A stretch of DNA of 64,000 bases, taken from Iphione sp. A-MEVVRFRX5 (lineage: Eukaryota). Below are positions 6,073 through 21,268 of the stretch, piece after piece (position 1 is the stretch's first letter; each line of letters begins with the position of its first letter). Below the pieces are notes generated by a model, which ran no database searches, was not told the DNA's origin, and saw nothing but the letters and a program-made list of their open reading frames with translations. Location of the stretch: positions 116,002,001 through 116,066,000 of the forward strand of contig OZ320313.1 of assembly GCA_976226885.1 (NCBI GenBank), in the 5' to 3' direction. The position numbers and the translations under genes are program-made.

Positions 6073-6537
6073 TTACGCCATTATATGCGGCGCGGAGAAG
6101 AGGATGGCGAATGTGGAGACGATGGTGAACATGGTGAACATCCACAAGCACAGTCGATCGATAACCATGGCGGCAAACTTCCAGTCGTTGCAATGGTCGT
6201 CGAACTCCTCGTCCTTCTTCATCTTCTCCGTGAGGAAGCGCAGCTCACGCAGGATCTCCCTCAGCTCCACCTTGCCTGGGTACATGTGCAGCGAATTGTC
6301 ATCGCCTCCGCCGCCGCCCACGCTGCCTAGCTTGACGCTAGTGTAGTGCGGCGCGCTGTTGGCGCGGAAGTCGTCGTCGAGATCGAGCACATTGGCCAGT
6401 AAGCTCTTGGAGGAGCGCTCGCGCAATTCAAGGTCGCGCATTTTTGCATTTTGAAGAAGCTTCTTACGGCTGATTTCTCTCCCTGGGCGTTGCATTCGTA
6501 GCAACCACGCAAGCCATTCACATACACCCTTCTTCAC
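6073..6537 (-). CDS. CHRNA7-like: alpha7-like nAChR last coding exon (465 nt; intracellular loop and M4, stop TAA)
   Basis: Acceptor cacAG|GTG. Contains [15 protein letters not shown] and [33 protein letters not shown], motifs typical of alpha7-group subunits. Confidence 0.96.
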
Positions 6538-9500
6538 CTGTGAATGTGGATCAGATATTTAATCTTTCGCGACACGCAAAGAAGTGTTGTACTCATGGGG
6601 AAGTTTCCTAAAGACATGTGTTTTCAAACTATTCAATTCTAATGTTTATCTTTAGTGGTTCCGTTGATTGTGATTTAAGAATGCCCAGGTAAAAAAATGC
6701 GGCTTATGCAAAGTATCAAAATTTATATTTGAGATCAACAGGATCAGGTCGCTGGATTGATCAATTTTGCTGACATTTATTGTGCCAGGATCATTTGGCA
6801 TGAGTGCATGGGCCTGTACTTACCCACTGGGGCATGTCGTGTGTGTCAGGTGTCCTGTGGTGGTAGTTTAAAACCAACACCGTGAAGACCACGGATAGCG
6901 AGCACATCAGCATGATGCAGGCAAAATACATACCTAGAACGGGAACATAACTTCAGTAGGATGAGTACAGGTTAACCGAACAGGATATACACGTGGGTGT
7001 ATGAATATATAAACCAATAGATGCCATCTGCCCTTGTGACCTTAGTTATATCAGTTGAAATCAGAGTATCCAAACTTCTACCATCTTTTTAATAAAGTTT
7101 CTTTGTCATACACATGAATAATCGAGGCGTTTGTGCTACTGTTGATGATGGCAAAATGTAATATGTATACAGGTATGGCTTCATGTCGTTTGGGCGATGG
7201 TTTCAATATTTCTTAAGTAGTTATGTAAAAAACACATGTAATTTGTCTGATGTTACTAGATGCTATAATCTTACATGATTGTACATGTACATGTACAGTG
7301 AATACTTATATAAATAACATATGAATCAGGCTGATCTGTGAAGGGCGATATATATAAATGTATAGCGAATTCCAATTATAAATGTGTGCGAAAACGAGCA
7401 GCACATAATTACATGTACTTATTTATACAACATGAGTTGGAGTAATGGATATCAGATTGCGGGAGGAGGAACCTTAGGGTGTGGAATGAAAGTGGTTGTA
7501 TTAGGTGGAGGACGCACATATGTATACAGGGAGTTGCTAGTGTGGTGCGACTTCAATAGAAGTACATGTATGTTAGTGTGTACTATACGCTAAGTCGACA
7601 AAACATCTACCAGGTAGATGCACTTAACGCTATATGTGTAATTTAACAGCTACTGTATGCAGAGGCAATATAAACATATGTTTCGGTTCAAAGCATGACA
7701 ATACCAATGTTGAAAAATAAAATCATGAAACTCAATCAACTTTGCAAAAACAAGTCTAGCAGAGGTTTTCGTGTTCGTTGCATAGGCCTAACGTTGTAAT
7801 TTTCGATACCTACCGTCTCTGACCGTAAAAGGTCACAAAATTTCTTTGGTTATATATCTGCAGCATACTGGTCAGGTCACGCGAAGGCCTTGACCATACC
7901 ATTGCCGTAGCGGCTGTTGTTATATGTCGGCTACTCGGGCCAACTACAATAGATAGGGCTTAGAGGCCTAGTCCTGGAAAGATTGGGACCGCCTGTGGGA
8001 AAAATAATTCAAAGAGAAAGAACCGGGTTCTTCCCCTTCTGGAAGCCAGCAATACCCCTGCCCCACCAAACACTATAGGGTGCCATGAAAACAAAGTACT
8101 TGGACACGGGTTACAGGTATAGGAGGTTCCTTTTCAGGCCAGAAGAGTTATAATAACAGAGTTTTGTTATAAATTCACGAAAATTAACCTTAGTCCTCAA
8201 GGTCAACACCAAGTGCATCATTTTGCCACGCCAGCATTATCCAGAAAGATCAACCTCTCACGCCAAAAGAGTCCAATAGCATCACACACCGAAATCAGAA
8301 GGTTTCTTTTCTCCCAAAGAATTTGTTATTTTGGATAAGGTATATATTGATTCAAATGGAGAACGTAGCAAGCTGTTAAATTTTAAGCTCTGGCTTGAAT
8401 AGCAGAAAAAGCTCTGTGCCACCGTATAACAAGTAGAATTCTCGAGCAATTTGGTGTTTATGACTTCCGATAAAACTGGATGGTTATGGCGGCCTCTCTT
8501 ACTCACGGACAATGACAGGGATAAAGAAAAAATGGGTAAGGGGGCGGGGGCCAGCTGCCGTTCAGTTATACTTAAGGATTGAAAAAAAAAACACAAAAGC
8601 GCTTCCAGGCTCTTCGTAAAAACGGCGCTAAAAATGAAGCCTCCAGCAGACGACATATGCGGCCTAACACTGCGTCATCTGGCGCCAAAAGCTGCCGGGT
8701 CTAGCGTAGGTCTGTGCAAAATACAGACATACTTTGATTCAAAAATGTTCGTATGTAGTATGCAATATTCAGATATACATACATAGGGATATGAACAGGT
8801 ATAAGGGAATGATGGTAAGATCGCAAAAACACGAAAGCCTTGCAGAGTTGCGGTCGATACACAGGGCGCACTTTACACGGGTGAACTGTACCTGGGAAGG
8901 ACATGCTGTCATTCTGCCGGCCTATAAACACTTGCCTATCTACACAAACTTCGAGTAAATGCGTTTCTTTCAGACCATAACATACGTAAACACAAATGAA
9001 TCGAAGGAGGGTCAAATACTGTGAAACTACCAAAGCTGAACTGGCCACTCTTCTCTCTGCGAACCCCCATGGGTGTGATTGGTGTCACTTTGTGAAAGGA
9101 TGGACCAATCACACAGAGATCCTTCGGCAAACAGTGGGACCTCTGGTTTAACGAGGTAATTAAACCACATATCGATAATTCAAGTGATTCGGTTCTCCTA
9201 TTTAGACCAAAATGTTACTTAAAACACGCATCAGTATTAAATGTACTGTTTTATAATAAGAGAAACTTGTTCAAAGCACATTGTGAATACTCGCCCTCAA
9301 AATTGTCGGAGACGGTAGATTTTAAAAAGACAGCGTTAAAATTGCTAAGTGATAGCTAATAAGTAAAAAATATACGGAGTGTAAATTATATAAAAAATAT
9401 TACCATTGCTGGAATATATATTTATAAAAATGTAGGCAGGGAGGCAAGCAGAGGCATCAATGCAAGCAGGTGGAAGCTAGTGGGTGAGAGAGCATGCATG

Positions 9501-12500
9501 CGCTTGGCAGTGTTGTGACACGTGAATAGTTGTTAGTTAGACTTGGTCCATGTTTGTCCTCATGGGCTACTCGTAGTGCATTTTGGGAAACGAGATAATC
9601 ATTTGATGGGGCAAGCCTCTCACCTATGAGCGGCACAGCGTCCGAGGTTGGGGGCATTGTTTCTGCTACCAGCAGGAGAAACACAGTGAGAGACAGGAGG
9701 ATAGTGACGCCTGGAAGAGAGAGAAGACCAGACAACTGAGTCGGGCCGGACGGCGCCAGACCTCACGTAGTTAGAAAAGTCCCGCCGCCAGACGGAGCAC
9801 AGCTTGCTCGGATATCCCAGTCTCAAATTTGTGTTGGTCTTTCAGAGAAAGAGCGTCTGTTTGTATAATAATGTACGTTATACTGCTAAAAGATATTCAT
9901 TATCGGTTTCCACAGAAAACTCTCTTAAATGGAAAGGGTACGGTGCAACAAGAGAATGGCACTATTTTTATTTTTCCTGGAGTTTAAGCACAGACGTCGT
10001 TCCAGAGGAAAGACTCCCCTCCGAGATTCCCTCAGCAAGTTGTGAGCCGTTGGTCAAAAAACGTATTGTACAAAAGTAATGCAAGTTGCACACAGATCAT
10101 GTTTACACTGCAGACAACCACAGGGCCCGAATACTCTAACCGATTTGACGCAGCTCACTGGAGGAGCGCCAGTCTGCACTAGCGCCCTCTGGTGAGTAAC
10201 CGTGTCATCTCGGACGACAATACGAGTACTGCTCCCTGGTGCGATCTAGATGTACTAATCAGCGTTAGGCTGGTTGACACATTTGACACACGGTGCCAGC
10301 CAAAGGTGATACACTTGAATCACAACAGTGTGCAGTCGTTGTATCTACAGAAGTATGTTACTTGCTACAACAAGTAGTATATATATACACAGCTAGAAAC
10401 AATCAACTACTGAATGCCTATAGCCAGAACAACAAATTCTAATCTACAGTAATATACATTTAGATATACAGATTTCAATTCAAGCGTAATGCGAGTTAAA
10501 TATTACGAGTAAGGATTTTAATACTGAATTAGAAGACATAGTACTATCCAGTTAGTTATGTCGGGAAACTATTCGCTACACTTCAGGCTACTACAATGGT
10601 CAATTTCATAAAACTGTCACAAAGACTAACATTTGCGCACGTTGTTAGTTATTTACATAGTTATCTCCTACACGCTCACCAAGGTATATGTTTTCAACCT
10701 GATCTATTTTGTTATTTGCGTGCAACTTCGTTTAGTCGGTTATCCAGTTATTTACAATCGAAACATGGCGCACAAAACTAAACATTCCTTCGGGCTGTGT
10801 TTTGTCTAAATCGTGGAAACATTATCCCTTTCTGATGGACCTTTTCATTAATTACACATAATTACACGTTATACCCTGCAGATTCTTCGTCAATTAGGAG
10901 AACAAAAGGAGCGTATATAACACCAATTATTGCTAGCGTTATCAATTGTGATGATAATAAAAGGCATATCGCATATTTCGATAGAAGTATTGCACGGTAG
11001 GACATTTTCTCGTGCATCATGTAAGTCAAGAATACATAATCCAAAACTCGATACAGTTGACAAAGGTACAGGATATATACGAAGAAATATCTATATTTGA
11101 AGTGCATATAAAAGGTTCGTGAACAATAAATCAAATTAGTATCAACAGGATGTGTGTCATCATTTAAAAGTGCAATACATGAACATACTATATTTTGTGA
11201 GAACAGACCAAGTTACTCTGATTATGTATAAAGTTATATTTTAAATGGAGTAATTCTAATTGTGCATTCTTTGTTTCATCTCTCACAACAATAGGGGAGA
11301 TGACTTTGTTTAAACACCTGTGGCCTAATATGCATGTGTATCTACCCCTGGGCTAGGGCAATTCGAGCTCATTATTATACTGGCAAATTCTATGTACCAT
11401 AATAATTTTATAACAGATATGTTGTGTACAGGTCTGTTTGAAAAAAAATATGCTGGTAACATTCCTTTATAACTTCCTGTATGTCGAACACAACCTTTCA
11501 TTAAAATGTTTTATATGAAAATGTACTTCTTTGAGACGGGCGCAAAAGGCGTTTGTAGGAGTCTATAAAGATTTGTCTACGTATTTAGCAAAACAACTGA
11601 ATTTTTCGGTTTTAATTAAGTGGTGACAGATTGTCAGTCATACTACTGCAGTATAGTGGGTGTTTGCCTTTTCCAGATCGGGTCTCCTCAAATTAGAATG
11701 GGCCACTACTGGGACTAAGGCTGGGCTTCAATGTGTCTGATTTGCAAAAAAAAAAAAAAAAAAAGGGGGGGGGGGCCCTGTGTAAGGGGAAAACATGGTA
11801 TCATAAGCAGGAACTAAGCTTTTCCATGTGTCTGGTATGTGTATCCATGTCCATATGTCTGAGGTCCAAAACAAGCAATGTCCATGAATTTTCCCGTAGA
11901 AACAGATCCAGACAGAAAAACTGATGAGTAGGGTACGAACATGATGGTTTACATCAGGGCCCAGGCTATTAGATTATGAAAAAGTACCTAATTTGCATAT
12001 CATTTGCATAAAGCTGCATGCGTATTAAGAAATTTAAGGAGAAAGTGTCACTATTTGCACAGTAATTGTTCTGTTTCAAGATACATGTATTTACGGAAAA
12101 AAAGTACGCTCTTTATATACACAGTTATTGTTCATTTTCAAGAATTTAAGGGTGAAGCCACACAATTGAGTTAATACTCAGTTTACCTAACGCACATACA
12201 CACATGGATATACATGGAAAAGGCCAATCAGTGATTGTCTGAAACTGTCTGGGAAATCAAACAAAACAGGTCCTGTATATATAGAAAAATACCAGATACA
12301 AGGAAACCCAGCCTTAAATAGAAAAAGACGTATTGTGAACTGCCTGACAATACTCCAAAGGCAGAGAGTAACGCAGAATTGTACAGGTTTATAGACGAAC
12401 GATTTAAAACAAAAGGTGCTTATGTTTCAATCATAATTTAAGTGCAGAAAAATTCTTTAAAATCATTTTACATGATAGCAAGTGTAGTATAATTTATATC

Positions 12501-15500
12501 TAGGTATTTTGAGGTCGATTACACAGCAAGATTCATGAGAAGTCTGTACACTTGTCTCCCTGGTTTAATTGTTGATAATGTTCTAGTAATAGTTGATGTA
12601 TTAGGTTTCTTTGTATACTTTATATACTTTGTAAACGATGTTTAAAGTAAAAAACTGACCTCCAGTGATCGGAAGTACGTATGGGAAGCATTCTATTAAA
12701 AGGTTATATTGTCTTCCCTCTCTAACCAATTAGGTTCTCGGATTATTATAGTTATTCCTTTCGTGCCCATATTGTTCCATATTGATTATTGTTAAATCGA
12801 GCAGCTTACCTGTATTGACAATATTGCTATACACCCCACTATACGCAGTGAACTCAAGGATGAAACTGACATTATATTAAAGGTATCACCTAGCCACGAC
12901 TACAAACTATTAGTCAGTCCAGTGTGCTGATGTAAATGTATCCAAAATGAAAACTTTGACCTAAGAGGTGAGTTGTTTACTTTTAAATGTTATTTTATAT
13001 TTTCTACTAAATTCCAAGAAAATATATCTCAAAACTTGTCCCAGATTTTCAATAAAATCAATATATAATATGGTGCAACATGAAATATTTGTCGGTAACA
13101 GAGGAGACAAATTTTAGAAGAAATTACATTTGCAATCATTCCCTTTTCGGAAAAGAACCGAACGTCGAAAGTCAATCTTTCTGAGGAAAGCCCTCTAAAA
13201 TGGTCTAGAATGGCCGATTGCAATAAGCAAAAATGTACCTGAATATGTAACAGATGACAGAGACTCAGCAAGAGCAAGCAATATAAAACATACGGCCAGC
13301 ACAAAACAATATGATTCAACGAGTCCGGCCACAATGAATCATGCACTGAACACGGGCCATACACCTCACGTCGTATGGCGTTGCGTCACGCGAGGGTGAC
13401 GGAATGGTCAGAACTGCTCTTACCTAAGGAGATTTTCTCCCCAGCGTCGGGAGGAAGGGTGAATGTCAGCAGTGCCATTGATGATATCAAAACACAGGGG
13501 ATTATCAAGTTAAATCCGTAATAAAGCGTTCTCCGTCGTATGTGGATTGTAAAGGTAATATCTATATATTGTTCTGGACAGCAATCGTATTGTACTACAT
13601 TGCGCTTTGCGGGTACACCTAGAAACAAAGAAGATATGAGACATTGTCAAGCAACGGGTGTTTGATTTTTGTATGAAGAAAGGAAAGAGTTAGAGAACCT
13701 ACCACATGCTATTTTCTCTCCGGCATCCGGGGGCATGGCGAATACCAGTATCGACAGGAGGGAAAGCATGAGGCAGGGAACAACCAAGTTAAAAACGTAG
13801 TAGAGCTTTCTGCGTCTGATTTTGATGGTAAATGTAATATCGATATACTGCTCTGGGCAACAGTCGTACTGTACAACATTCCTCGAGGCAGGGACATCTG
13901 CAAAGACACGACACCACGTTACTCCCACGCACTATCCGGTGCACATGCCCAATGCTGCCTTTGCTCGCATGTCACCTTCTACGTCAGTGATTACGTCATG
14001 CCTAGGTCAACGCTGACGTTAGTAGACACATCCGACGCGTTGGACTCCCACGACAACAGCGAGAATGAAAGTGGCGTTAGCGTTGTATATGTGGCGCTTG
14101 CAAAACAATGGGTTGGGGTGGGGGATCGGGGATCGGGGGAACAAATCAAAAAAGTATTAAACCCGTACTCAAAATAATCCTAAAGCAACACCTAATGTAT
14201 GATGCCTACTAGCTGCCATCTACGGGGAATTGGTCATCCAGAACGCAAATGTTAGTTTTTCAGTTTAAGCTTTCGTAATGTTCAAAAATTTTGGGAGGTT
14301 TAGGGCAAACTTAGCTTGGCGTGTTTGCTGTCAGGGATGGTATTTAAAACTGTGTCCAAAACAGAGCATCACAACATAGGCATGCGTTCAATTTAGATTC
14401 TTTATCTCATGTTATCGTTAATAAGTTGAAGAAAAACATCCTCTAAACTAGATTACACTTCGAGAAATATTAGATGAAACAAGATCTTTTTGAGTGGACA
14501 GGTTTTAGTTCTTAGTACTAGCAAGGTGAATTTAACGACTTGTTTAAGGTTCTGAAGGACAAGTGCATTTGTGAAAATGTAGAAACACTCAAAACATGAC
14601 TGCCCTGGGAATGTTCCAGAAACGAATCTGTTGTGCCCATTTATTTAACTTCTGACGTTTTATGAAATGCCAATCAAAAACAAGAGCGACTGATCTTATT
14701 GTTTAATCGAATCAAAAACTGTCTTACCATCAGAAAGCTCTATGACCATTGAAATGAAAAGAAATTATAGTTGACTGTCTTAGGAGAATCTATAGTAATA
14801 GGAAACACATCGGAAGGTCATCTTATAGAATGCAGTTTATAAGAGTTAATCAACGTCAAAGAAGGCATGATAATGAAGGTATGTCAGCATAAACTTACAT
14901 GCCTCATGATGTCAATTCAATACAAAAGTTAGTGAAATCATATTATTTCTATGGCACACAGTCTACATATCCTTAAAAGGAATAGTAAATCATTAAAGTC
15001 TATATTTTATCTTTCAAAACGAAAATAAAGCTGGCTTAAGCTGAGAATATGAGCAGCGCATGGAAAGAGTGCTTAGCATATGTGCATTCTCAGTGAGTCG
15101 CTCTGCGCAGCATCGCTTGCAAGATTATTCTCAAAACTGATGGACTAACCTGCATGTAGCCATGCCTCCAACACTACGGAATTCATTGTTAGACGGTGGC
15201 TATCTATCTACATGAATGTTTACAATCATTTGATAAAATAATACTAAAATAAAGACTTATACTTTGGGCCGTTGCTTCATTTTCACAAATAGTTTGTCGA
15301 ATATATATTATATCTATATATTCTTTTTATTATCATGTATAGTTCAGGTAACATATTACATTGGTAAGCAGCTTTGTGCTATCATCGTCAATTAGGGATT
15401 TATTCGGGGAAAAATTTTAAATATTACAAATATCACCCGGCTCCCGTTGCCTGTTATCATCAGGTCACCGGCTTTCTTACCGACTAGTTCCCATTCTCCG

Positions 15501-18500
15501 TTGGGTATGAAACTGGATATGTCGCCTCCTTCTCCTTGCAGTTGGAGGTCTATAGCAGACCCATCGTAAGTCCAGGAACCAAATTTCATGGTGCATTTCT
15601 GGTCGTCAAATGGGAACCACGTAATATCTATCTTACATGTACTAAGGAAGAGTCCCGGTGGCACCCAAAGACAATCGCCGTTTGACGAGATAACGACGTT
15701 CGTCGGGAATGTACTGTCGATGTCTTCGTCAGCACTATTAAGATAAAGCGTAAGGATAACAGCAATGAATCTGTTTTGCCATTTAACAAGTTGATTATAT
15801 AGGGACACAGAAACGATCGGTCAAACCGAAGAAAAATCCTTTCCAATCATGGTCTCCTTCTCTCGGTAGCAAAACTTCGCTTTACATAAATTCTTTACCT
15901 ATCCAAGAAAGGTGACCGCGCTAGGTCGGAGTTGCATTTCAGATCAAATCAGATTTTCAAAAAATGATTTCGAGCAATTCGGGAAATTCTATCCAACAGT
16001 AGTGTGGTGAAAGATGAAATTTGTCTTTATCTATGTTCACTTGCCCTTTCGTATTGATTCATTTGATTTGATTGATTTGATTTTTATTGAGAAACAGCCA
16101 TTCTTACCCAGAATGGTTTGCATTAGTATCTCAATACTACTGACTACTACTTTATCGAATTGTATGGCTACGTGTTAGTACATGTTGTTCAACACAGATT
16201 TTAAACAATTTCTTTTCCACTCCAATCCATCTACAGGGCAACTTGTTCCATTGCGTTAACCCGTCATACTTGATACTTTTTGCTCAGTCAGTCTGCTGGC
16301 GAATTCTTTTCAGCAATATATTTAACCGGATCGTTACCTGTTATACATAAGAATATCAGGTTTCCAGAGATATTTCGGTGGAACCCGTATGCTCTTCAAG
16401 CCGCCATACTCGGTTTCATTCCATCGGAGACTGTAGTCATTCCACACCTGCAACATTTAGACCAGTGGTAGATGCTTTATACCCGAATGGAATTCGGCAT
16501 CACTTCAAGTCGGTTCCAAATTTAGTTATCTCTTCATGATAGCATATATTAACATCTACAATTTTCCTCCGCGTCCATATATATGTATACTGATTTATTC
16601 AATATTTCAATTGCACCTATATCTGGGAGACCTGAGGTAAGAAGTGTGCAAATGTGTCTTTGTTGTCGTGTGTGTGATAAAAAAAACTTCAGAGCAATTA
16701 CAGGAATTCGCAGGAGATTACCAGAATTATATTAATAATGGAGCGATTAGATGGGGAAAGACAGTTAGCAGAGACACGAAAGGAAATTAGAACAGAATGA
16801 CCGATTCGAGTTCTCTCACCACTTACATGTATATTGTACAATGAGTAAGTGCGACAAAACATTGTTTAGTTTTATTTTAATCTACTCTATTGTGAAGTGT
16901 GAGCGAGAAACGAGCAGGAACATCACAAACAATGGAAATGGAACCTCACTCGATGTTTCTCGTCTGAAGTCACGTATTCCAGGGTGTTTCATTGGATTTT
17001 GTAAGGAAGGAGTACCTGGACCATAGGTCTTTAAATACACTGGTACAACAATTTTCTGTCCACTTATATATTCGTCCCCTCTTGTGGCTGTGTTTTGCTC
17101 ACGTCCCTCGGTGGGTTCTCTACTCCCCTTTAAAAAATGCTACATTGGTTTTGATACCAATAATAGCTCATGACTTTTACAAGGAACGAAGTTCGCAGGT
17201 TAAGGTCACTGGGCTCGAGTTTTCCTAGGATCACACGACGTGTAATCATAAAGACTACCAAAGACTGCCTTGCAAATGCAATCGAATGGGGGAATCAATC
17301 CATGTGGACAGCTGTAGTTACATGTAAGCGTTCACATGAACTACGTCGTGCTAGAAGGCGGTCCTTTCTTGGCTGCGGCCACCTGCACGTGAACTAGCAG
17401 CACTCACCTGGCAGCACCCAAGAGCGTTCCCTTTGCCAAGTGCTTCCCACTCCCCATCCCTTATCAATCAAAACGTATATTAACGTTCCAGTGCCTCGGC
17501 TGACCAAACGCACATCTTATAGAGAGGGCGTACTAAGAAGCAGCCCAAGGACTTGTTAACCGTCGGGGCTGGTTAATCTTCCTGCCAGCTTAAAACTAGA
17601 GGGGTGAGTAGCCGGTGGTATTTTCAACCACTACCAATCACGGCTCTCCAACTGAGAAACCTTACCAACCTACGCGCATGCTACCTACAGAAAAAAAGTG
17701 GCAGTATTCTATCAGTGTGGAAGAGGAAAACAACAGGTGAATCATCTATCATCGCGGAAGTCTGTTCGGTCCCTGATGCATATCTATCCACGCTATGGAA
17801 CCAAGAATTATGCAGAAATGTTTACCAGGCACTAAACGGACGGCGCTCAGGTAACGTGCGCCATGACGGAGTTTGGTGTGTGTCTCTATATATAAACATG
17901 TATTTATATATCCAGGGAATGCCATGCTTGCTTCCGTTACGATTGAAATTTATGGCGAAAATAATCTCACTCTTGGTACTGGCACCAGGGGTGTTTTCAC
18001 ATTTTTTAACACAGTAATATTTTAGATGTAACCGAGCCTGGTGATACAGATAACATGGATAAAGGCTCATTTCAATTTTCATTCTGAACGGAATTAACAT
18101 CGTTCTTTCCTACCAAAGATCTTATTTGCTAACTTAACACTACAAAGAAGGAAGTAATAACAAAAGTGTACTACTTGATAAAAATGGTGTACTCTTCTCC
18201 CGTGGAATGTAAGATATTTGGAAGAATATATATACGAATATGTTTATACAAGTATATATATTCGGTATACATGTGCGAAATCCAAAATTATCAAAATATA
18301 TACTTAATGTATAAAGCAATGCATATATATATAAACCTAGAACATTTGAGACATCCTTAGAATAGTTACTCTTATTTATTATCTTAAAGGTGATGAAGTA
18401 TAACAAGATCATACTCAATTTGATTTCACAGATGCGACAATTCTCAAATGGTTCTTTTTATGCTTGTTTTAAAACTTAGGCTAACACAGAGTGTGGTACG

Positions 18501-21268
18501 AGGACAAGTAAAGATGCCCTAAGATCATAATGGTGAGGTAGTATCTTATGGCATAGAATTTCTATAGGCAAGGTAAGGTGCTGCCTAGCTGAATGTGAAG
18601 GCAGGGAGTGAAGGACTTTGACTCTCACGACCAGGGGCACCGACAGGAGCAAAATGCACATTACGGCATTTGACGTGACATGCTTATCATTATATTGTGT
18701 TTGTTCGTATATTGTATATATACCATATGACTATATAGAGAGAGATAATGTACAAGATTTAAGAAAAAGAGATGCAGTAGAGGAAGGGGGTTGACGTTCA
18801 TTTAGGGTAGGTGAGGGGTTCTTTTCATGCATGATTCATTTAGATTCTGGAGTTAGGCTGGGCATGCAATTTAGGCTTTCCTTAAATGAATCAGCTCAGG
18901 GTGGCACTATAAAAAGCTGATGGGTTCTCGTCAACCGTTTTTTTTTTCGATCAAATTTTGAGAATCCGAAACTGTCCATGAAAAAGGTAGTAATTGTATT
19001 AAACATTGTCTCCAAAGCCAAAAAAAATCTACTGTGTTCATACGTTCCCACGTCGATCCCTACCGGATTGACCAAAGTCAGGATTGGTATTAACATTTGA
19101 GCAAACAATAATAAATAAACGGAAATGAAATTAATCAGCACAGAAAAGTCGAAACTGGTAACAATTTCACAATTTTCACTGATTAGTCTAGGAAACGCGT
19201 TAGGAGAGATTTTGACACCACCCTGAGAGTGAGGAAAGCATGTGAAGAATTCAGGTCCCTTCACTAGAAATCAAAATACACGGAGGATAAAATAAGTTGA
19301 TATACACTTATTTAAATCAATCGAGGATAAAATAAGTTGAAAGTTAATTTATATTATTTTATGGGTTAGCTAATAGTTATTTACTACGGGGGAGGGGGAT
19401 TATTTAAATTAATCGTTTATTACCTCTGAGGCCCAAGGCCAGAGGTGTTAATCTTTCATTTTAATTTTGAATGGTTTAAATGCTCCCTTTTTCTTGTAAG
19501 TTAAATAATTATTGCCGATAGTTGTCTTGCATAAGGCACACTTAAGTTAAAACGTGAAATTTCCTAAGTGACAAGATTATAGGTTTACCAGCAATTTTGC
19601 CTTTCCCATGTCAACCTAACATCTTACTAGCGTGCGCTGTCAACTTGTTTTATCCTCATTTGGCTTTATCCTTAAATGTTTCTGACTTACCAAATTTAAC
19701 CAGATATTTGTGTTTATGATTTGATTCTTTTCATCCTGTGAGGAAGAGAGAAAGAGTGTGTTATTACAGAAACGCTACCGAGCCGCGTGAGGGTTAAGAG
19801 TCACGCGACCTTTCACGGGTCAAGGTCAGACCGCCAGTTAACTTACCATATTCAACCATATATTAGATGTTAATATTTGGTTCTTTTCATCCTGGGAAAA
19901 ATAAAAAACAGAGATTAGTCAGCTGTAACAGCGGTAAGATGGACACTTGGCACCTCGAATTCGGTGTCTCTAGGGGGCAGCACAGCAGTGAGATTATTAT
20001 TGGCTGCTGCCAGCAAGCGATGTAGGATTACCAACACTATGCCGTCAGCAAACAAGAATGGAACAATTAGACTAAAACACGCTAGTTACACAGCACACTG
20101 TGGTGTAAGATCCATCTCAGGGCATGAAATCACGATACAGACTTGAAATATTCAAAAAGGCTTGCTAGAAAAAGATTACCGTCGTAAAGTTTACAAGAAA
20201 AAAGTCGTGTGGCATTGCTACCTTGGTGTAGATTGCCGGTTTCAGTTACGAATATCCCGAATCTAGCAGTTGATAACGAGACTGAACACTGTATTCTAGG
20301 AACATACGTCCCCACAGAAAAGTGGAAAGGCACTTTGACTATCAAAATCATATTTCCATTGTGTAAGATCGTGTTTTGCTGTCTTTCCAATCGCCACCGT
20401 GGGAAAGTAAACCACGTCACCAAGTGATATGCAAAGAGGGTGGTTTAAGTATTCAGCAGGGTTCGACATTCAAAATGTACTCCAAAACCCGAAAACCAAA
20501 CTTCAGTCGTGTCCAGTTAGTGATAATCAGCGAACTAAAAACATTAATCTAATTGGAATAGTACACACAATAATGTGAAACACAGCAAGGGACAAGACGC
20601 TGTGTCGAATCACGCAGTTCACGCCGGTGCACAGGAATCGAAATGGTTCGATCAGAAAGAAAAAAACAAGAGGAATAACAACACTCCAGCGAGACAATAA
20701 TACAAATGTATATGACAGTGCACATAAACATGGCTTCGTTATTGAAACATACAAATAACAGACATGCATTATAGGAATCATTGACCAGTGACGCTTGATA
20801 TTTGATTAATGTATGCTACTAGTTGTGAGCTAATCGTCACTCTGCCATTTACGGATCCAAATGCTACTAATTCGATACATTACTAACCGCAAGGAGCACA
20901 TCGCACTGACAGCATTAAATTACCGTGCTGTTTTCTCATGTTCTTCTAAACCATACGTGTGTTCTTATGCATTGCTAGATGGCCAAATCCATTAACTACC
21001 GTAACGCAAACTGGTAGACGTTTTGTCTCATTCTTTGAATGGAGTCATTTATGCGGATCATGCCACTAGCTTGGTTCGGTATATTTAAAACAAGCAATGA
21101 TCATGGAGGTAGCTAGCAACTACATTACCACGTCGATGATTTGCTGAAGAACCAGCCCAAAGTGGACAGTCAGGGCCGCGCTTTCGTTGGCCACCGGCCG
21201 CTCCAGCGTGTCGTACCTGGAGAACAGGTCAGTCAGGAGCCTCTTCTCGTACGGCCCCTGATGGGTAC
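6073..21268 (-). CDS. CHRNA7-like: Nicotinic acetylcholine receptor alpha subunit, alpha7-like (pentameric ligand-gated cation channel); multi-exon, 5' coding exon not located
   Basis: The spliced exons give loop A (WKPDILMYN), the Cys-loop ([15 protein letters not shown]), loop B (WTYDG), loop C vicinal cysteines (YDCCPEQY), GEK before M2, and M1-M4. Exon sizes 140/45/110/254/195/87/110/465 match the CHRNA7 pattern. All junctions are GT-AG with compatible phases. Confidence 0.96.
6824..6933 (-). CDS. CHRNA7-like: alpha7-like nAChR exon 9 (110 nt, M3): (G)[36 protein letters not shown]
   Basis: Acceptor gttctAG|GT, donor TGG|GTaagt. Translated by hand. Confidence 0.95.
9624..9710 (-). CDS. 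CHRNA7-like: alpha7-like nAChR exon 8 (87 nt, M2): (G)[28 protein letters not shown]
   Basis: Acceptor tctcttccAG|GC, donor ATAG|GTgaga. Confidence 0.96.
10180..10196 (-). promoter_or_regulatory. CTCF-like motif (TCACCAGAGGGCGCTA)
   Basis: Close match by eye to the CTCF core consensus. Confidence 0.4.
13424..13618 (-). CDS. CHRNA7-like: alpha7-like nAChR exon 7b (195 nt): (G)[64 protein letters not shown]
   Basis: Acceptor tttgtttctAG|GT, donor TTAG|GTaaga. Phase 1/1, with a canonical alpha7-like M1. Confidence 0.95.
13703..13897 (-). CDS. CHRNA7-like: alpha7-like nAChR exon 7a (195 nt): (D)[64 protein letters not shown]
   Basis: Acceptor gtctttgcAG|AT, donor TGTG|GTaggt. Phase 1/1, open reading frame. 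Confidence 0.92.
15481..15734 (-). CDS. CHRNA7-like: alpha7-like nAChR fused exon 5/6 (254 nt): (S)ADEDIDSTF...[15 protein letters not shown]...WTYDG...NGEWELV
   Basis: Acceptor cttaatAG|TGCT, donor GTCG|GTaaga. Lies inside ORF 15392-15808 and contains the Cys-loop and loop B. Confidence 0.96.
16055..16140 (-). mobile_element. Short retroposon 3' tail relic
   Basis: The minus strand has CAATAAAAA followed by an (ATCAA)n tandem tail, as seen at LINE ends. Confidence 0.35.
16338..16447 (-). CDS. CHRNA7-like: alpha7-like nAChR exon 4 (110 nt): [36 protein letters not shown](S)
   Basis: Acceptor gttgcAG|GTG, donor AACAG|GTaacg. Contains the loop A motif. Confidence 0.95.
19691..19735 (-). CDS. 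CHRNA7-like: alpha7-like nAChR exon 3b (45 nt): [15 protein letters not shown]
   Basis: Acceptor ctcttcctcacAG|GAT, donor TTG|GTaagt. Same length and phase as exon 3a. Confidence 0.93.
19847..19891 (-). CDS. CHRNA7-like: alpha7-like nAChR exon 3a (45 nt): [15 protein letters not shown]
   Basis: Acceptor tttttcccAG|GAT, donor ATG|GTaagt. A branch-point-like ctgactaat lies at 19914-19922. Encodes the loop D Trp. Confidence 0.93.
21129..21268 (-). CDS. CHRNA7-like: alpha7-like nAChR exon 2 (140 nt): (G)[46 protein letters not shown]
   Basis: Acceptor tatttccAG|GT, donor GTG|GTaatg. Phase 1 in, phase 0 out. Not in the ORF track; translated by hand. Confidence 0.95.

What the first reader, a model, noticed from the sequence alone, without database searches (positions are those of the whole stretch)
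13424..13897. Tandemly duplicated loop C/M1 exon (7a/7b): candidate mutually exclusive splicing of an alpha7-like nAChR
Seen in the sequence: two 195-nt, phase-1/1 exons with intact GT-AG sites, 84 nt apart, both homologous to CHRNA7 exon 7. The 20-aa stretch [20 protein letters not shown] is identical in both copies, yet 11 of its 20 codons differ and all differences are synonymous. That pattern indicates an old duplication with both copies under purifying selection, not a dead copy. Including both exons would keep the frame but duplicate M1 and invert the topology, so exclusive use is expected (inference). Established: insect alpha6 has mutually exclusive exons 3a/3b and 8a/b/c. I do not know of a described duplicate of the loop C + M1 exon.
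Basis: partly seen in the sequence, partly recalled or inferred. Interest (0 to 1): 0.92.

Follow-up and report, generated by a model that had tools for sequence, protein, structure and literature searches.

The report
Alternative loop C/M1 exons, alpha7-like receptor
An alpha7-like nicotinic receptor gene carries two adjacent versions of the exon for the end of the ligand-binding domain and the first membrane helix; the pair is old, conserved across several invertebrate phyla and used one at a time in relatives, adding a third alternative-exon site to the two known in the insect alpha6 nicotinic receptor gene.

Summary
On the minus strand, 13897-13703 (7a) and 13618-13424 (7b) are two 195-nt exons in the same phase. 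They have AG/GT splice sites, lie 84 nt apart, and both match human alpha7 residues 178-241. They share 46 of 64 residues; synonymous sites are saturated (pS 0.80, pN 0.17).

They belong to a gene whose exon sizes match vertebrate CHRNA7. Exon 3 is also duplicated.

The pair is not private to this genome. The same order (7a upstream, 7b downstream) occurs in Capitella, Owenia, Lineus, Lingula and Macrostomum. The 7a-type exons of the five included in the exon tree form one clade (98/94 support).

Public annotation already holds equal-length isoforms that swap the two exons (Lineus X1-X6, Owenia). Contigs from two relatives show exon 5/6 joined to 7a, and 7a joined to exon 8 and 9 with 7b skipped.

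Insect alpha6 exon 8a/b/c encodes TM2 (29 aa), so this is a different site. I found no paper describing it.

Not shown: reads from this species itself, strict exclusivity, and the mechanism that enforces it. The other notes on this window (3a/3b, steric device) are related.

Verdict: a real, ancient alternative exon pair and a new variant of a known kind. Moderate interest.

The parts
13703..13897 (-). Exon 7a: the alternative loop C + pre-M1 + M1 + M1-M2 loop exon, running into the first M2 residues (195 nt, phase 1/1). Its signature is [16 protein letters not shown]...GEKIAC.
   Evidence: spliced in relatives; 7a clade
13619..13702 (-). The 84-nt intron between 7a and 7b. It starts with the donor GTAGGT. 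Branch-point-like motifs are CTAAC (A 13 nt from the donor), TTGAC (A 56 nt from the donor, 28 nt from the acceptor) and CTCAT (A 66 nt from the donor, 18 nt from the acceptor).
   Evidence: folds no better than shuffled sequence (z +1.6); about 30% diverged plus 4 indels in a relative
13424..13618 (-). Exon 7b: the canonical loop C + M1 exon (195 nt, phase 1/1). Its M1 half is nearly invariant across phyla ([37 protein letters not shown]).
15481..15734 (-). Constitutive exon 5/6 (254 nt) encoding the Cys-loop (C-x13-C) and loops B and F. It is the upstream splice partner of 7a or 7b.
   Evidence: joined to 7a at 15481/13897 in an X1 contig
9624..9710 (-). Constitutive exon 8 (87 nt) encoding M2. 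It is the downstream splice partner and is present as a single copy here.
   Evidence: joined to 7a in an X3 contig
19847..19891 (-). Exon 3a (45 nt, [15 protein letters not shown], loop D), the first of a second tandem exon pair in the same gene.
   Evidence: note s1-356240
19691..19735 (-). Exon 3b (45 nt, [15 protein letters not shown]), 111 nt downstream of 3a.
21129..21268 (-). Exon 2 (140 nt). Exon 1, which should encode the signal peptide, was not located.
16338..16447 (-). Exon 4 (110 nt), single copy here.
6824..6933 (-). Exon 9 (110 nt) encoding M3.
6073..6537 (-). Exon 10 (465 nt) encoding the cytoplasmic loop, M4 and the stop codon.

Best explanation
7a and 7b are alternative, essentially mutually exclusive versions of the loop C/M1 exon of an alpha7-like nicotinic acetylcholine receptor subunit gene. 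The gene lies on the minus strand, with exons from 21268 down to 6073.

Each mRNA takes one of the two exons between constitutive exon 5/6 (donor at 15481) and exon 8 (acceptor at 9710). This gives two subunits of the same length.

The agonist-contacting loop C is almost identical in the two forms (23 of 24 residues). The differences are elsewhere:
- pre-M1: RRRT versus RRRK;
- the top and faces of M1: 13 of 21 positions from YY[G/V]F to the LP/MP turn;
- the first M2 residues at the cytoplasmic pore mouth: GEKISL versus GEKIAC, that is positions 2' and 3'.

The likely effect (inferred) is two channel types from one gene. They would differ in gating or desensitisation, in conductance or ion permeation, or in assembly and allosteric modulation, but not in agonist recognition.

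The duplication dates from before the split of annelids, nemerteans and flatworms (tree, shown); the brachiopod Lingula shows the same arrangement but was not in the tree. 7b is the slowly evolving canonical form and 7a the faster but still constrained variant.

How exclusivity is enforced is not settled. A short-intron steric effect is possible in this lineage but cannot be the general mechanism.
For: Anatomy:
- Equal length and phase, intact splice sites, and exon sizes 140/45/110/254/195/87/110 that match CHRNA7.
- Both exons match alpha7 residues 178-241.

Selection:
- pS 0.80 versus pN 0.17 between the two copies.
- Compared with the relative L001, 7a gives pS 0.60 / pN 0.155 and 7b gives pS 0.68 / pN 0.039.
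- In the X10 genomic contig of a relative, all 7 listed changes in 7a and all 8 in 7b are synonymous. The intron has 24 substitutions and 4 indels.

Use in RNA:
- An X3 contig (703 nt) runs 7a -> exon 8 -> exon 9 with 7b skipped. The junction is exact and reads GEKITCG|VTILL.
- An X1 contig joins exon 5/6 to 7a in exact register at 15481/13897.

Annotation elsewhere:
- Lineus longissimus RefSeq isoforms X1-X6 are all 480 aa. X3 and X6 carry the 7a type and the others the 7b type.
- Owenia has 7a-only and 7b-only isoforms of 537 aa and of 393 aa.
- Macrostomum P0154 has a 7a-type exon joined directly to exon 8.

Synteny and origin:
- The order is 7a then 7b in the window, L001, Capitella, Owenia, Lineus and Lingula.
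- The 7a clade has 98/94 support.
- The 7a donor is G|GTAGGT in all five loci examined.
Against: - No read or contig from the window's own species was obtained. The RNA evidence comes from two coded relatives at about 90-96% identity.
- No 7b-containing spliced contig was seen in the one read-laying run. Use of 7b rests on its canonical nature and on annotated proteins of other species.
- Gene models containing both exons exist (Capitella P0152, Owenia P0156, Macrostomum P0006 and P0151), so some double inclusion cannot be excluded.
- Double inclusion and double skipping both keep the reading frame, so nonsense-mediated decay would not remove such errors.
- 7a has been lost in Helobdella and in the Aplysia gene examined. 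It looks degenerate in one siboglinid-like contig (P0002), so it is dispensable in some lineages.
- The functional consequences are inferred from residue positions only.
Confidence: 0.85

Rival explanations
1. 7a is an optional or leaky extra exon rather than a strict alternative. Transcripts with 7a+7b, or with neither, would be common, and exclusivity would be only statistical.
For: - The 84-nt intron has ordinary splice signals and a branch-point-like TTGAC 56 nt from the donor, so it may be spliceable.
- Owenia model P0156 splices its 72-nt intron and keeps both exons.
- Bombyx alpha6 is reported to include exons 3a and 3b in tandem in some transcripts (PMC2045683).
Against: - A subunit with two M1 helices would have inverted topology downstream.
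- The X3 contig skips 7b cleanly.
- All five Lineus isoforms read and four of the five Owenia isoforms carry exactly one copy.
- The Capitella model also strings 3a+3b together, which is typical of ab initio over-inclusion.
Confidence: 0.08
2. In this species 7a is an unused relic, a silent pseudo-exon that merely still looks intact. Only 7b would be spliced.
For: - 7a scores lower against alpha7 than 7b does (70 versus 87 bits) and evolves about four times faster at non-synonymous sites.
- 7a was lost or degraded in some lineages (Helobdella and Aplysia; P0002).
- No reads from the species itself were obtained.
Against: - The open frame, both splice sites, the vicinal cysteines, the M1 proline and the GEK motif are all intact.
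- All 7 listed substitutions in a close relative are synonymous, against about 30% divergence in the adjacent intron.
- 7a is spliced into mRNA-like contigs of two relatives.
- The 7a clade has been conserved since before the annelid/flatworm split.
Confidence: 0.05
3. The pair is an assembly artefact or a recent local duplication with no biological meaning.
For: Tandem duplicates can arise from misassembly of haplotypes.
Against: - The copies differ at 32% of nucleotides and their synonymous sites are saturated.
- The same arrangement occurs in five other genomes from independent projects and in a relative's contig that spans both exons.
Confidence: 0.01

Closest known systems
Insect nAChR alpha6 mutually exclusive exons 3a/3b and 8a/8b/8c (Grauso 2002; Jin 2007, PMC1919356; PMC3644170)
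   Same: - It is the same gene family (alpha7-like) and has the same exon structure.
- The window gene also has a tandem pair of the 45-nt loop D exon 3.
- The principle is the same: tandem duplicated exons of equal length and phase, one chosen per mRNA, conserved for hundreds of millions of years.
   Different: - Insect exon 8 encodes 29 aa of TM2 and the TM2-TM3 loop. It corresponds to exon 8 here (87 nt), which is single copy in the window.
- The duplicated exon here is the preceding 195-nt loop C/M1 exon, which is constitutive in the insect literature read.
- The taxa differ: Spiralia rather than insects.
RefSeq and ENA isoforms of the orthologous gene in Lineus longissimus (XP_064652926/936/944/952/968) and Owenia fusiformis (CAH1797306-10)
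   Same: They show the same exon swap: a 7a-type (RRRK...) versus a 7b-type exon in proteins of identical length. The genomic order is the same, and their 7a exons sit in the same clade as the window's 7a.
   Different: - These are database models. I found no publication or functional study behind them.
- The Lineus intron between the two exons is 789 nt rather than 84 nt.
- Lineus also has alternative copies of exon 4, which this window lacks.
Drosophila RDL exon 6 and exon 3 alternatives, GluCl exon 3 alternatives, and nAChR alpha4 exon 4/4' (PMC2064938)
   Same: These are mutually exclusive exons in Cys-loop receptor genes that change defined modules of the subunit. RDL exon 6 covers loops F and C.
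   Different: They affect the extracellular domain and ligand sensitivity. Here the extracellular part is nearly unchanged, and the M1 helix and pore mouth are what get swapped.
Steric-hindrance mutually exclusive exons (alpha-tropomyosin exons 2/3, alpha-actinin; cited in PMC1919356)
   Same: The intron between the alternatives is very short (84 nt here, 75 nt in L001, 72 nt in Owenia). In the window, a CTAAC followed by a pyrimidine run lies 13 nt from the 7a donor.
   Different: - The best-placed branch-point motif is 56 nt from the donor, which may be long enough for splicing.
- The intron is 150 nt in Capitella and 789 nt in Lineus.
- Steric exclusion is therefore unproven here and cannot be the conserved mechanism.

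Membership tests
alpha-type nicotinic acetylcholine receptor subunit, alpha7-like group | Cys-loop: two cysteines separated by 13 residues in the ligand-binding domain | tested here: met
   [15 protein letters not shown] in exon 5/6. Pfam Neur_chan_LBD, E 8e-27.
alpha-type nicotinic acetylcholine receptor subunit, alpha7-like group | Vicinal cysteines in loop C (the alpha-type signature) | tested here: met
   YDCCPE is present in both 7a and 7b.
alpha-type nicotinic acetylcholine receptor subunit, alpha7-like group | Four transmembrane segments and a GEK cation-selectivity motif before M2 | tested here: met
   M1 lies in 7a/7b, M2 in exon 8, M3 in exon 9 and M4 in exon 10. Pfam Neur_chan_memb matches 7a, 7b and exon 10. 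GEK is present in both copies.
alpha-type nicotinic acetylcholine receptor subunit, alpha7-like group | Closest solved relatives and exon structure are those of alpha7 | tested here: met
   The best PDB matches are all human alpha7. Exon sizes are 140/45/110/254 (=80+168+6)/195/87/110; the comparison with CHRNA7 exon sizes is from my own knowledge.
mutually exclusive tandem exon pair | Adjacent homologous exons of equal length and phase with intact splice sites | tested here: met
   195 nt each, phase 1/1, AG...GT splice sites, 84 nt apart.
mutually exclusive tandem exon pair | Both copies maintained by purifying selection | tested here: met
   pN/pS is well below 1 between the copies and against orthologues. 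15 of 15 listed substitutions in a relative are synonymous. The 7a clade spans phyla.
mutually exclusive tandem exon pair | Mature transcripts that contain one copy and skip the other, for each copy | tested here: inconclusive
   7a-only is met in relatives: an X3 contig runs 7a-8-9 and an X1 contig runs 5/6-7a. Both single-copy forms appear in Lineus and Owenia annotation. 7b-only was not observed in reads, and nothing comes from the window's own species.
mutually exclusive tandem exon pair | Double inclusion and double skipping are rare | not testable with these tools
Gene models with both exons exist in Capitella, Owenia and Macrostomum.
insect alpha6-type exon 8 (TM2) alternative cluster | Two or three tandem copies of the 87-nt TM2 exon | tested here: not met
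   tblastn of the exon 8 peptide finds one copy only, at 9708-9625. Insect exon 8 encodes 29 aa of TM2.
insect alpha6-type exon 3 (loop D) alternative pair | Two tandem 45-nt exons encoding DEKNQ...WL.. | tested here: met
   19891-19847 and 19735-19691, both with AG/GT splice sites. Their use in RNA was not tested here. Aplysia, Lineus and Tubulanus RefSeq isoforms swap this exon.
steric-hindrance exclusion (tropomyosin type) | The donor-to-branch-point distance in the intron between the alternatives is too short for a spliceosome | tested here: inconclusive
   yTnAy motifs place the branch A at 13, 29, 56 and 66 nt from the donor in the 84-nt intron. The real branch point is unknown. Orthologous introns are 72-789 nt.

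The most novel reading that the evidence does not exclude
The 7a/7b pair would be an ancient switch, dating from before the radiation of annelids, nemerteans, brachiopods and flatworms. It would exchange the M1 helix and the 1'-3' pore mouth of an alpha7-like channel and hold the agonist loop constant by co-evolution. Within a species the loop C halves resemble each other more than orthologues do, even though synonymous sites are saturated. On this reading the two forms are physiologically distinct channels (in conductance or calcium permeability, desensitisation, or partner and chaperone choice), deployed in different cells. In short-intron lineages such as this one, exclusivity would be enforced sterically.
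Probability: 0.3. Interest if true: 0.7.

Novelty: new variant of a known kind. Interest (0 to 1): 0.55.

Why it matters
Mutually exclusive exons are the main way invertebrate Cys-loop receptor genes diversify. In insects they matter for pharmacology: alpha6 is the spinosad target.

This finding shows a third module of the alpha7-like gene under such control outside insects: pre-M1, M1 and the cytoplasmic pore mouth. It has been conserved since early spiralian evolution.

It offers a natural, evolution-tested pair of M1/pore variants on an otherwise identical subunit. That is a clean system for asking what M1 contributes to gating, permeation, modulation and assembly of alpha7-type receptors.

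It also flags gene models in Capitella, Owenia, Macrostomum and Lingula that either string both exons together or miss one of them.

Tried and rejected
- **Insect exon 8.** I first suspected that insect alpha6 exon 8a/b/c was this same exon, because arthropod-like hits (P0003-P0007) carry tandem loop C/M1 copies. The literature rules this out: exon 8 is 29 aa of TM2. The arthropod tandem copies come from crustaceans (Amphibalanus, Armadillidium). They fall inside the arthropod clade, so they are an independent duplication.
- **Conserved intronic elements.** I looked for docking or selector elements conserved between the window and L001-L004. Only exons align.
- **Inverted repeats.** In a scan of 9711-15480, none of the 25 longest of 48 pairs involves the 84-nt intron. 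One element at 14244-14261 can pair with 10621-10637 and with 13117-13133, but both partners lie downstream of 7b, and this is probably chance.
- **Local fold.** The intron with its flanks folds less stably than shuffled sequence (z +1.6).
- **Full-length 7a proteins.** A search for full-length proteins carrying 7a-type exons found only Capitella and Macrostomum. Equal-length isoforms were hidden inside 90% clusters and had to be pulled out with the listing of cluster members.
- **Uninformative runs.** Run X4 yielded one relative-species genomic contig that aligned only to exon 8, plus short fragments. Run X10 was genomic DNA of a relative, which was useful for the selection test but not for splicing.
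- **Failed look-ups.** Exact look-ups of P0006 and P0274 found no contig.
- **Not done.** Exon 1 (signal peptide) was not located.
Full report
**1. What is in the sequence**

Read on the minus strand, 13897-13703 (7a) and 13618-13424 (7b) are two open 195-nt segments. Each is preceded by a pyrimidine tract and AG and followed by GT. An 84-nt spacer separates them.

In the shared frame they encode 64 full codons plus split codons at both ends, so both flanking introns are phase 1. The peptides share 46 of 64 residues and the DNA is 68% identical.

A Nei-Gojobori count gives pS 0.80 (saturated) and pN 0.17. In the block [20 protein letters not shown], 11 of 20 codons differ and every difference is synonymous. 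That is about what fully randomised synonymous codon choice would give.

Both peptides best match human alpha7 residues 178-241: loop C with the vicinal cysteines, pre-M1, M1, the M1-M2 loop and the first M2 residues. 7b scores 87 bits and 7a scores 70 bits.

**2. The gene**

Stop-to-stop frames and splice-site inspection give a complete downstream gene model on the minus strand:

| Exon | Coordinates | Length (nt) |
|---|---|---|
| 2 | 21268-21129 | 140 |
| 3a | 19891-19847 | 45 |
| 3b | 19735-19691 | 45 |
| 4 | 16447-16338 | 110 |
| 5/6 | 15734-15481 | 254 |
| 7a | 13897-13703 | 195 |
| 7b | 13618-13424 | 195 |
| 8 | 9710-9624 | 87 |
| 9 | 6933-6824 | 110 |
| 10 | 6537-6073 | 465 |

All four combinations of one exon 3 with one exon 7 give an open 467-residue product. 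It has a Cys-loop, the loop C cysteines, a GEK motif and four transmembrane segments.

From my own knowledge, these exon sizes are those of vertebrate CHRNA7, with exons 5 and 6 fused. Exon 1 was not found. No further copies of exons 4 or 8 exist in the window.

**3. Relatives**

*First search.* A search of 1.8 billion representative proteins with the 7a peptide returned, at the top, open frames and gene models containing two matches in tandem. It also returned a set of fragments with the 7a signature [16 protein letters not shown]...GEK[IV]TC.

*Named members*:
- Capitella teleta CAPTEDRAFT_221893. This model strings together 3a+3b and 7a+7b.
- Owenia fusiformis.
- Macrostomum lignano.
- Two crustaceans, Amphibalanus and Armadillidium.

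*Genomic order and intron length.* Loci fetched for a relative from an environmental assembly (L001), Capitella (L002), Owenia (L003) and Lineus (L004) all show the same order: the 7a type upstream and the 7b type downstream. The intervening introns are 75, 150, 72 and 789 nt. The 7a donor is G|GTAGGT in every locus.

*Other lineages.* Lingula (L006) has an unannotated upstream copy about 500 nt before the annotated exon. The Aplysia gene examined and Helobdella have a single copy.

*Exon tree.* In a maximum-likelihood tree of the 64-residue exon peptides, the 7a-type exons of the window, L001, Capitella, Owenia, Lineus and Macrostomum form one clade, with 98% ultrafast bootstrap and 94% SH-aLRT support. 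The crustacean duplicates lie within a well-supported arthropod clade, so they arose separately. With only 64 columns the deeper branching is unresolved, but the 7a clade is one of the supported nodes.

**4. Is 7a used?**

Only one read-laying run was available, and all runs offered were Logan contigs of coded organisms.

- **X3.** A 703-nt contig, 95-96% identical to the window, covers 7a from 13892 to 13711. Its last codons differ and read GEKITCG, as in other 7a exons. It then continues exactly at the exon 8 acceptor through 9622, and on into a sequence that translates [10 protein letters not shown], the start of exon 9. So 7b and three introns are absent from it.
- **X1.** A 314-nt contig aligns to the end of exon 5/6 and, 74 letters later, to 13820-13761. 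That offset is exactly what direct joining of 15481 to 13897 predicts. The contig then continues with 7a-type codons (FLSLLVFAMP).
- **X10.** A 1288-nt genomic contig of a relative spans 7a, the intron and 7b. All 7 listed substitutions in 7a and all 8 in 7b are synonymous, whereas the 84-nt intron carries 24 substitutions and 4 indels.

Caveats:
- These are relatives, not the window's own species.
- Contigs show presence, not absence.
- A processed DNA copy could in principle mimic the X3 contig.
- No spliced 7b contig happened to be laid.

**5. Annotation elsewhere**

Pulling members out of 90% identity clusters revealed several sets of isoforms.
- The five Lineus longissimus RefSeq isoforms read (X1-X4 and X6) are all 480 residues. 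They differ only by swapping alternatives of exon 3, exon 4 and exon 7. X3 and X6 carry the 7a type.
- Owenia's annotation has 7a-only and 7b-only proteins of 537 residues, another such pair of 393 residues, and one model of 607 residues with both exons.
- Macrostomum P0154 joins a 7a-type exon directly to exon 8.

So the swap is already implicit in public databases. Seven full-text searches found no paper describing it. The main survey of lophotrochozoan nicotinic receptors does not treat splicing at all.

**6. Relation to the insect system**

- Insect alpha6 has mutually exclusive exons 3a/3b (15 aa, loop D) and 8a/b/c.
- Exon 8 encodes 29 aa of TM2 and the TM2-TM3 loop. It therefore corresponds to the 87-nt exon 8 here, which is single copy.
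- The exon 3 pair is shared in kind with insects.
- Macrostomum models also show two M2 exons and Lineus shows two exon 4 copies. So different lineages have duplicated different exons of this gene.

**7. What the switch changes**

Using the alignment to alpha7 (query residue i corresponds to alpha7 residue 177+i), the 18 differences between 7a and 7b fall as follows:
- one before loop C (residue 181);
- one after beta10 (202);
- one in pre-M1 (T207K);
- thirteen in M1 (211-231), including the position equivalent to A225. From memory, A225 together with S222 forms part of the M1 site for type II positive modulators of alpha7.
- two at the start of M2 (2' S to A and 3' L to C).

Across the 7a clade, the 3' position is never the canonical leucine; it is C, M, F or G. 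Across phyla, 7b's M1 half is 92% identical on average, against 66% for 7a.

The inference is that agonist recognition is held constant, while gating, permeation, modulation or assembly properties differ. This was not tested.

**8. A detail worth noting**

The loop C half of the exon is more alike within a species than between orthologous exons of different species. Within-species identity is 0.58-0.96, and highest in this window at 23 of 24 residues. The 7a-7a identity between species averages 0.54. Both Lingula copies share the same one-residue insertion.

In this window the synonymous sites of that half are saturated. Recent gene conversion therefore cannot explain the identity here. Co-adaptation of both versions to the same binding partner surface, or old conversion followed by strong constraint, remain possible.

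**9. How exclusivity is achieved**

This is open.
- Double inclusion and double skipping both keep the frame, so quality control by nonsense-mediated decay would not help.
- The introns between the two copies are the shortest in the gene: 84 nt, and 111 nt for the exon 3 pair, against 286-3713 nt elsewhere. They are also short in L001 and Owenia.
- However, the best-placed branch-point motif is 56 nt from the donor. The Owenia model with both exons splices a 72-nt intron. The intron is 150 nt in Capitella and 789 nt in Lineus.
- No conserved intronic elements were found, none of the 25 longest inverted-repeat pairs reported involves the short intron, and there is no unusual local structure.

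I rate steric hindrance as a contributing mechanism in this lineage at about one in three. The rest goes to regulated choice by splicing factors or to undetected RNA pairing.

**10. Verdict**

This is a real, ancient and selectively maintained pair of alternative loop C/M1 exons in an alpha7-like receptor gene. It is most likely used one at a time.

It is a new variant of a well-known kind of receptor diversification. It is visible in database isoforms of two other species but, as far as I could find, undescribed in papers.

Interest is moderate. It is not surprising in principle, but it is a useful natural experiment on M1 and the pore mouth. It also corrects several public gene models.

Noticed in passing
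window 19691-19891 (minus strand): The same gene has a second tandem exon pair, 3a/3b. Each is 45 nt with AG/GT sites, they lie 111 nt apart, and they encode [15 protein letters not shown] and [15 protein letters not shown]. This is the exon that is mutually exclusive in insect alpha6. Aplysia, Lineus and Tubulanus RefSeq isoforms swap it.
   Followed up: partly
L006 8688-8879 (Lingula anatina LFEI02000065.1): An upstream 7a-position exon is missing from the RefSeq protein P0252. It has a divergent M1. It shares with the canonical copy at 9383-9577 a one-residue insertion after the loop C cysteines, which suggests conversion or co-adaptation of the loop C half.
   Followed up: partly
P0151/P0153 (Macrostomum lignano) and L004 68547-68823 (Lineus): Other exons of the same gene are duplicated in other lineages. 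Macrostomum models contain two M2 exons (the insect exon 8 equivalent). Lineus has two exon 4 copies, used alternatively in isoform X4.
   Followed up: no
P0003 (Amphibalanus amphitrite KAF0300447.1), P0005 (Armadillidium vulgare KAL7640434.1), P0004/P0007: Crustacean alpha7/alpha6-like genes carry their own tandem loop C/M1 exon pair, with the canonical copy first and the variant second. In the tree it falls inside the arthropod clade, so it is an independent duplication of the same exon.
   Followed up: partly
P0002 (ENA contig, 7b identical in type to Ridgeia piscesae): The 7a copy looks degenerate in this siboglinid-like genome: the M1 Pro-Cys has become Pro-Ser, GEK has become GEN, and the branch is very long (2.29). 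Helobdella and the Aplysia gene examined have no 7a at all. The variant exon has therefore been lost repeatedly.
   Followed up: partly
window 14244-14261, 13117-13138, 10621-10637, 13823-13841: One intronic element upstream of 7a is complementary to two elements downstream of 7b (94% and 82% over 17 nt). One of those two is also complementary to part of 7a. This is probably chance in AT-rich introns, and no comparative support was available.
   Followed up: no
L001-L004 and window, 7a donor: The 7a donor is G|GTAGGT in all five loci examined, across phyla, whereas the 7b donor varies (gtaaga, gtaagc, gtacgt, gtaggt). A conserved sub-optimal donor may be part of the regulation.
   Followed up: no
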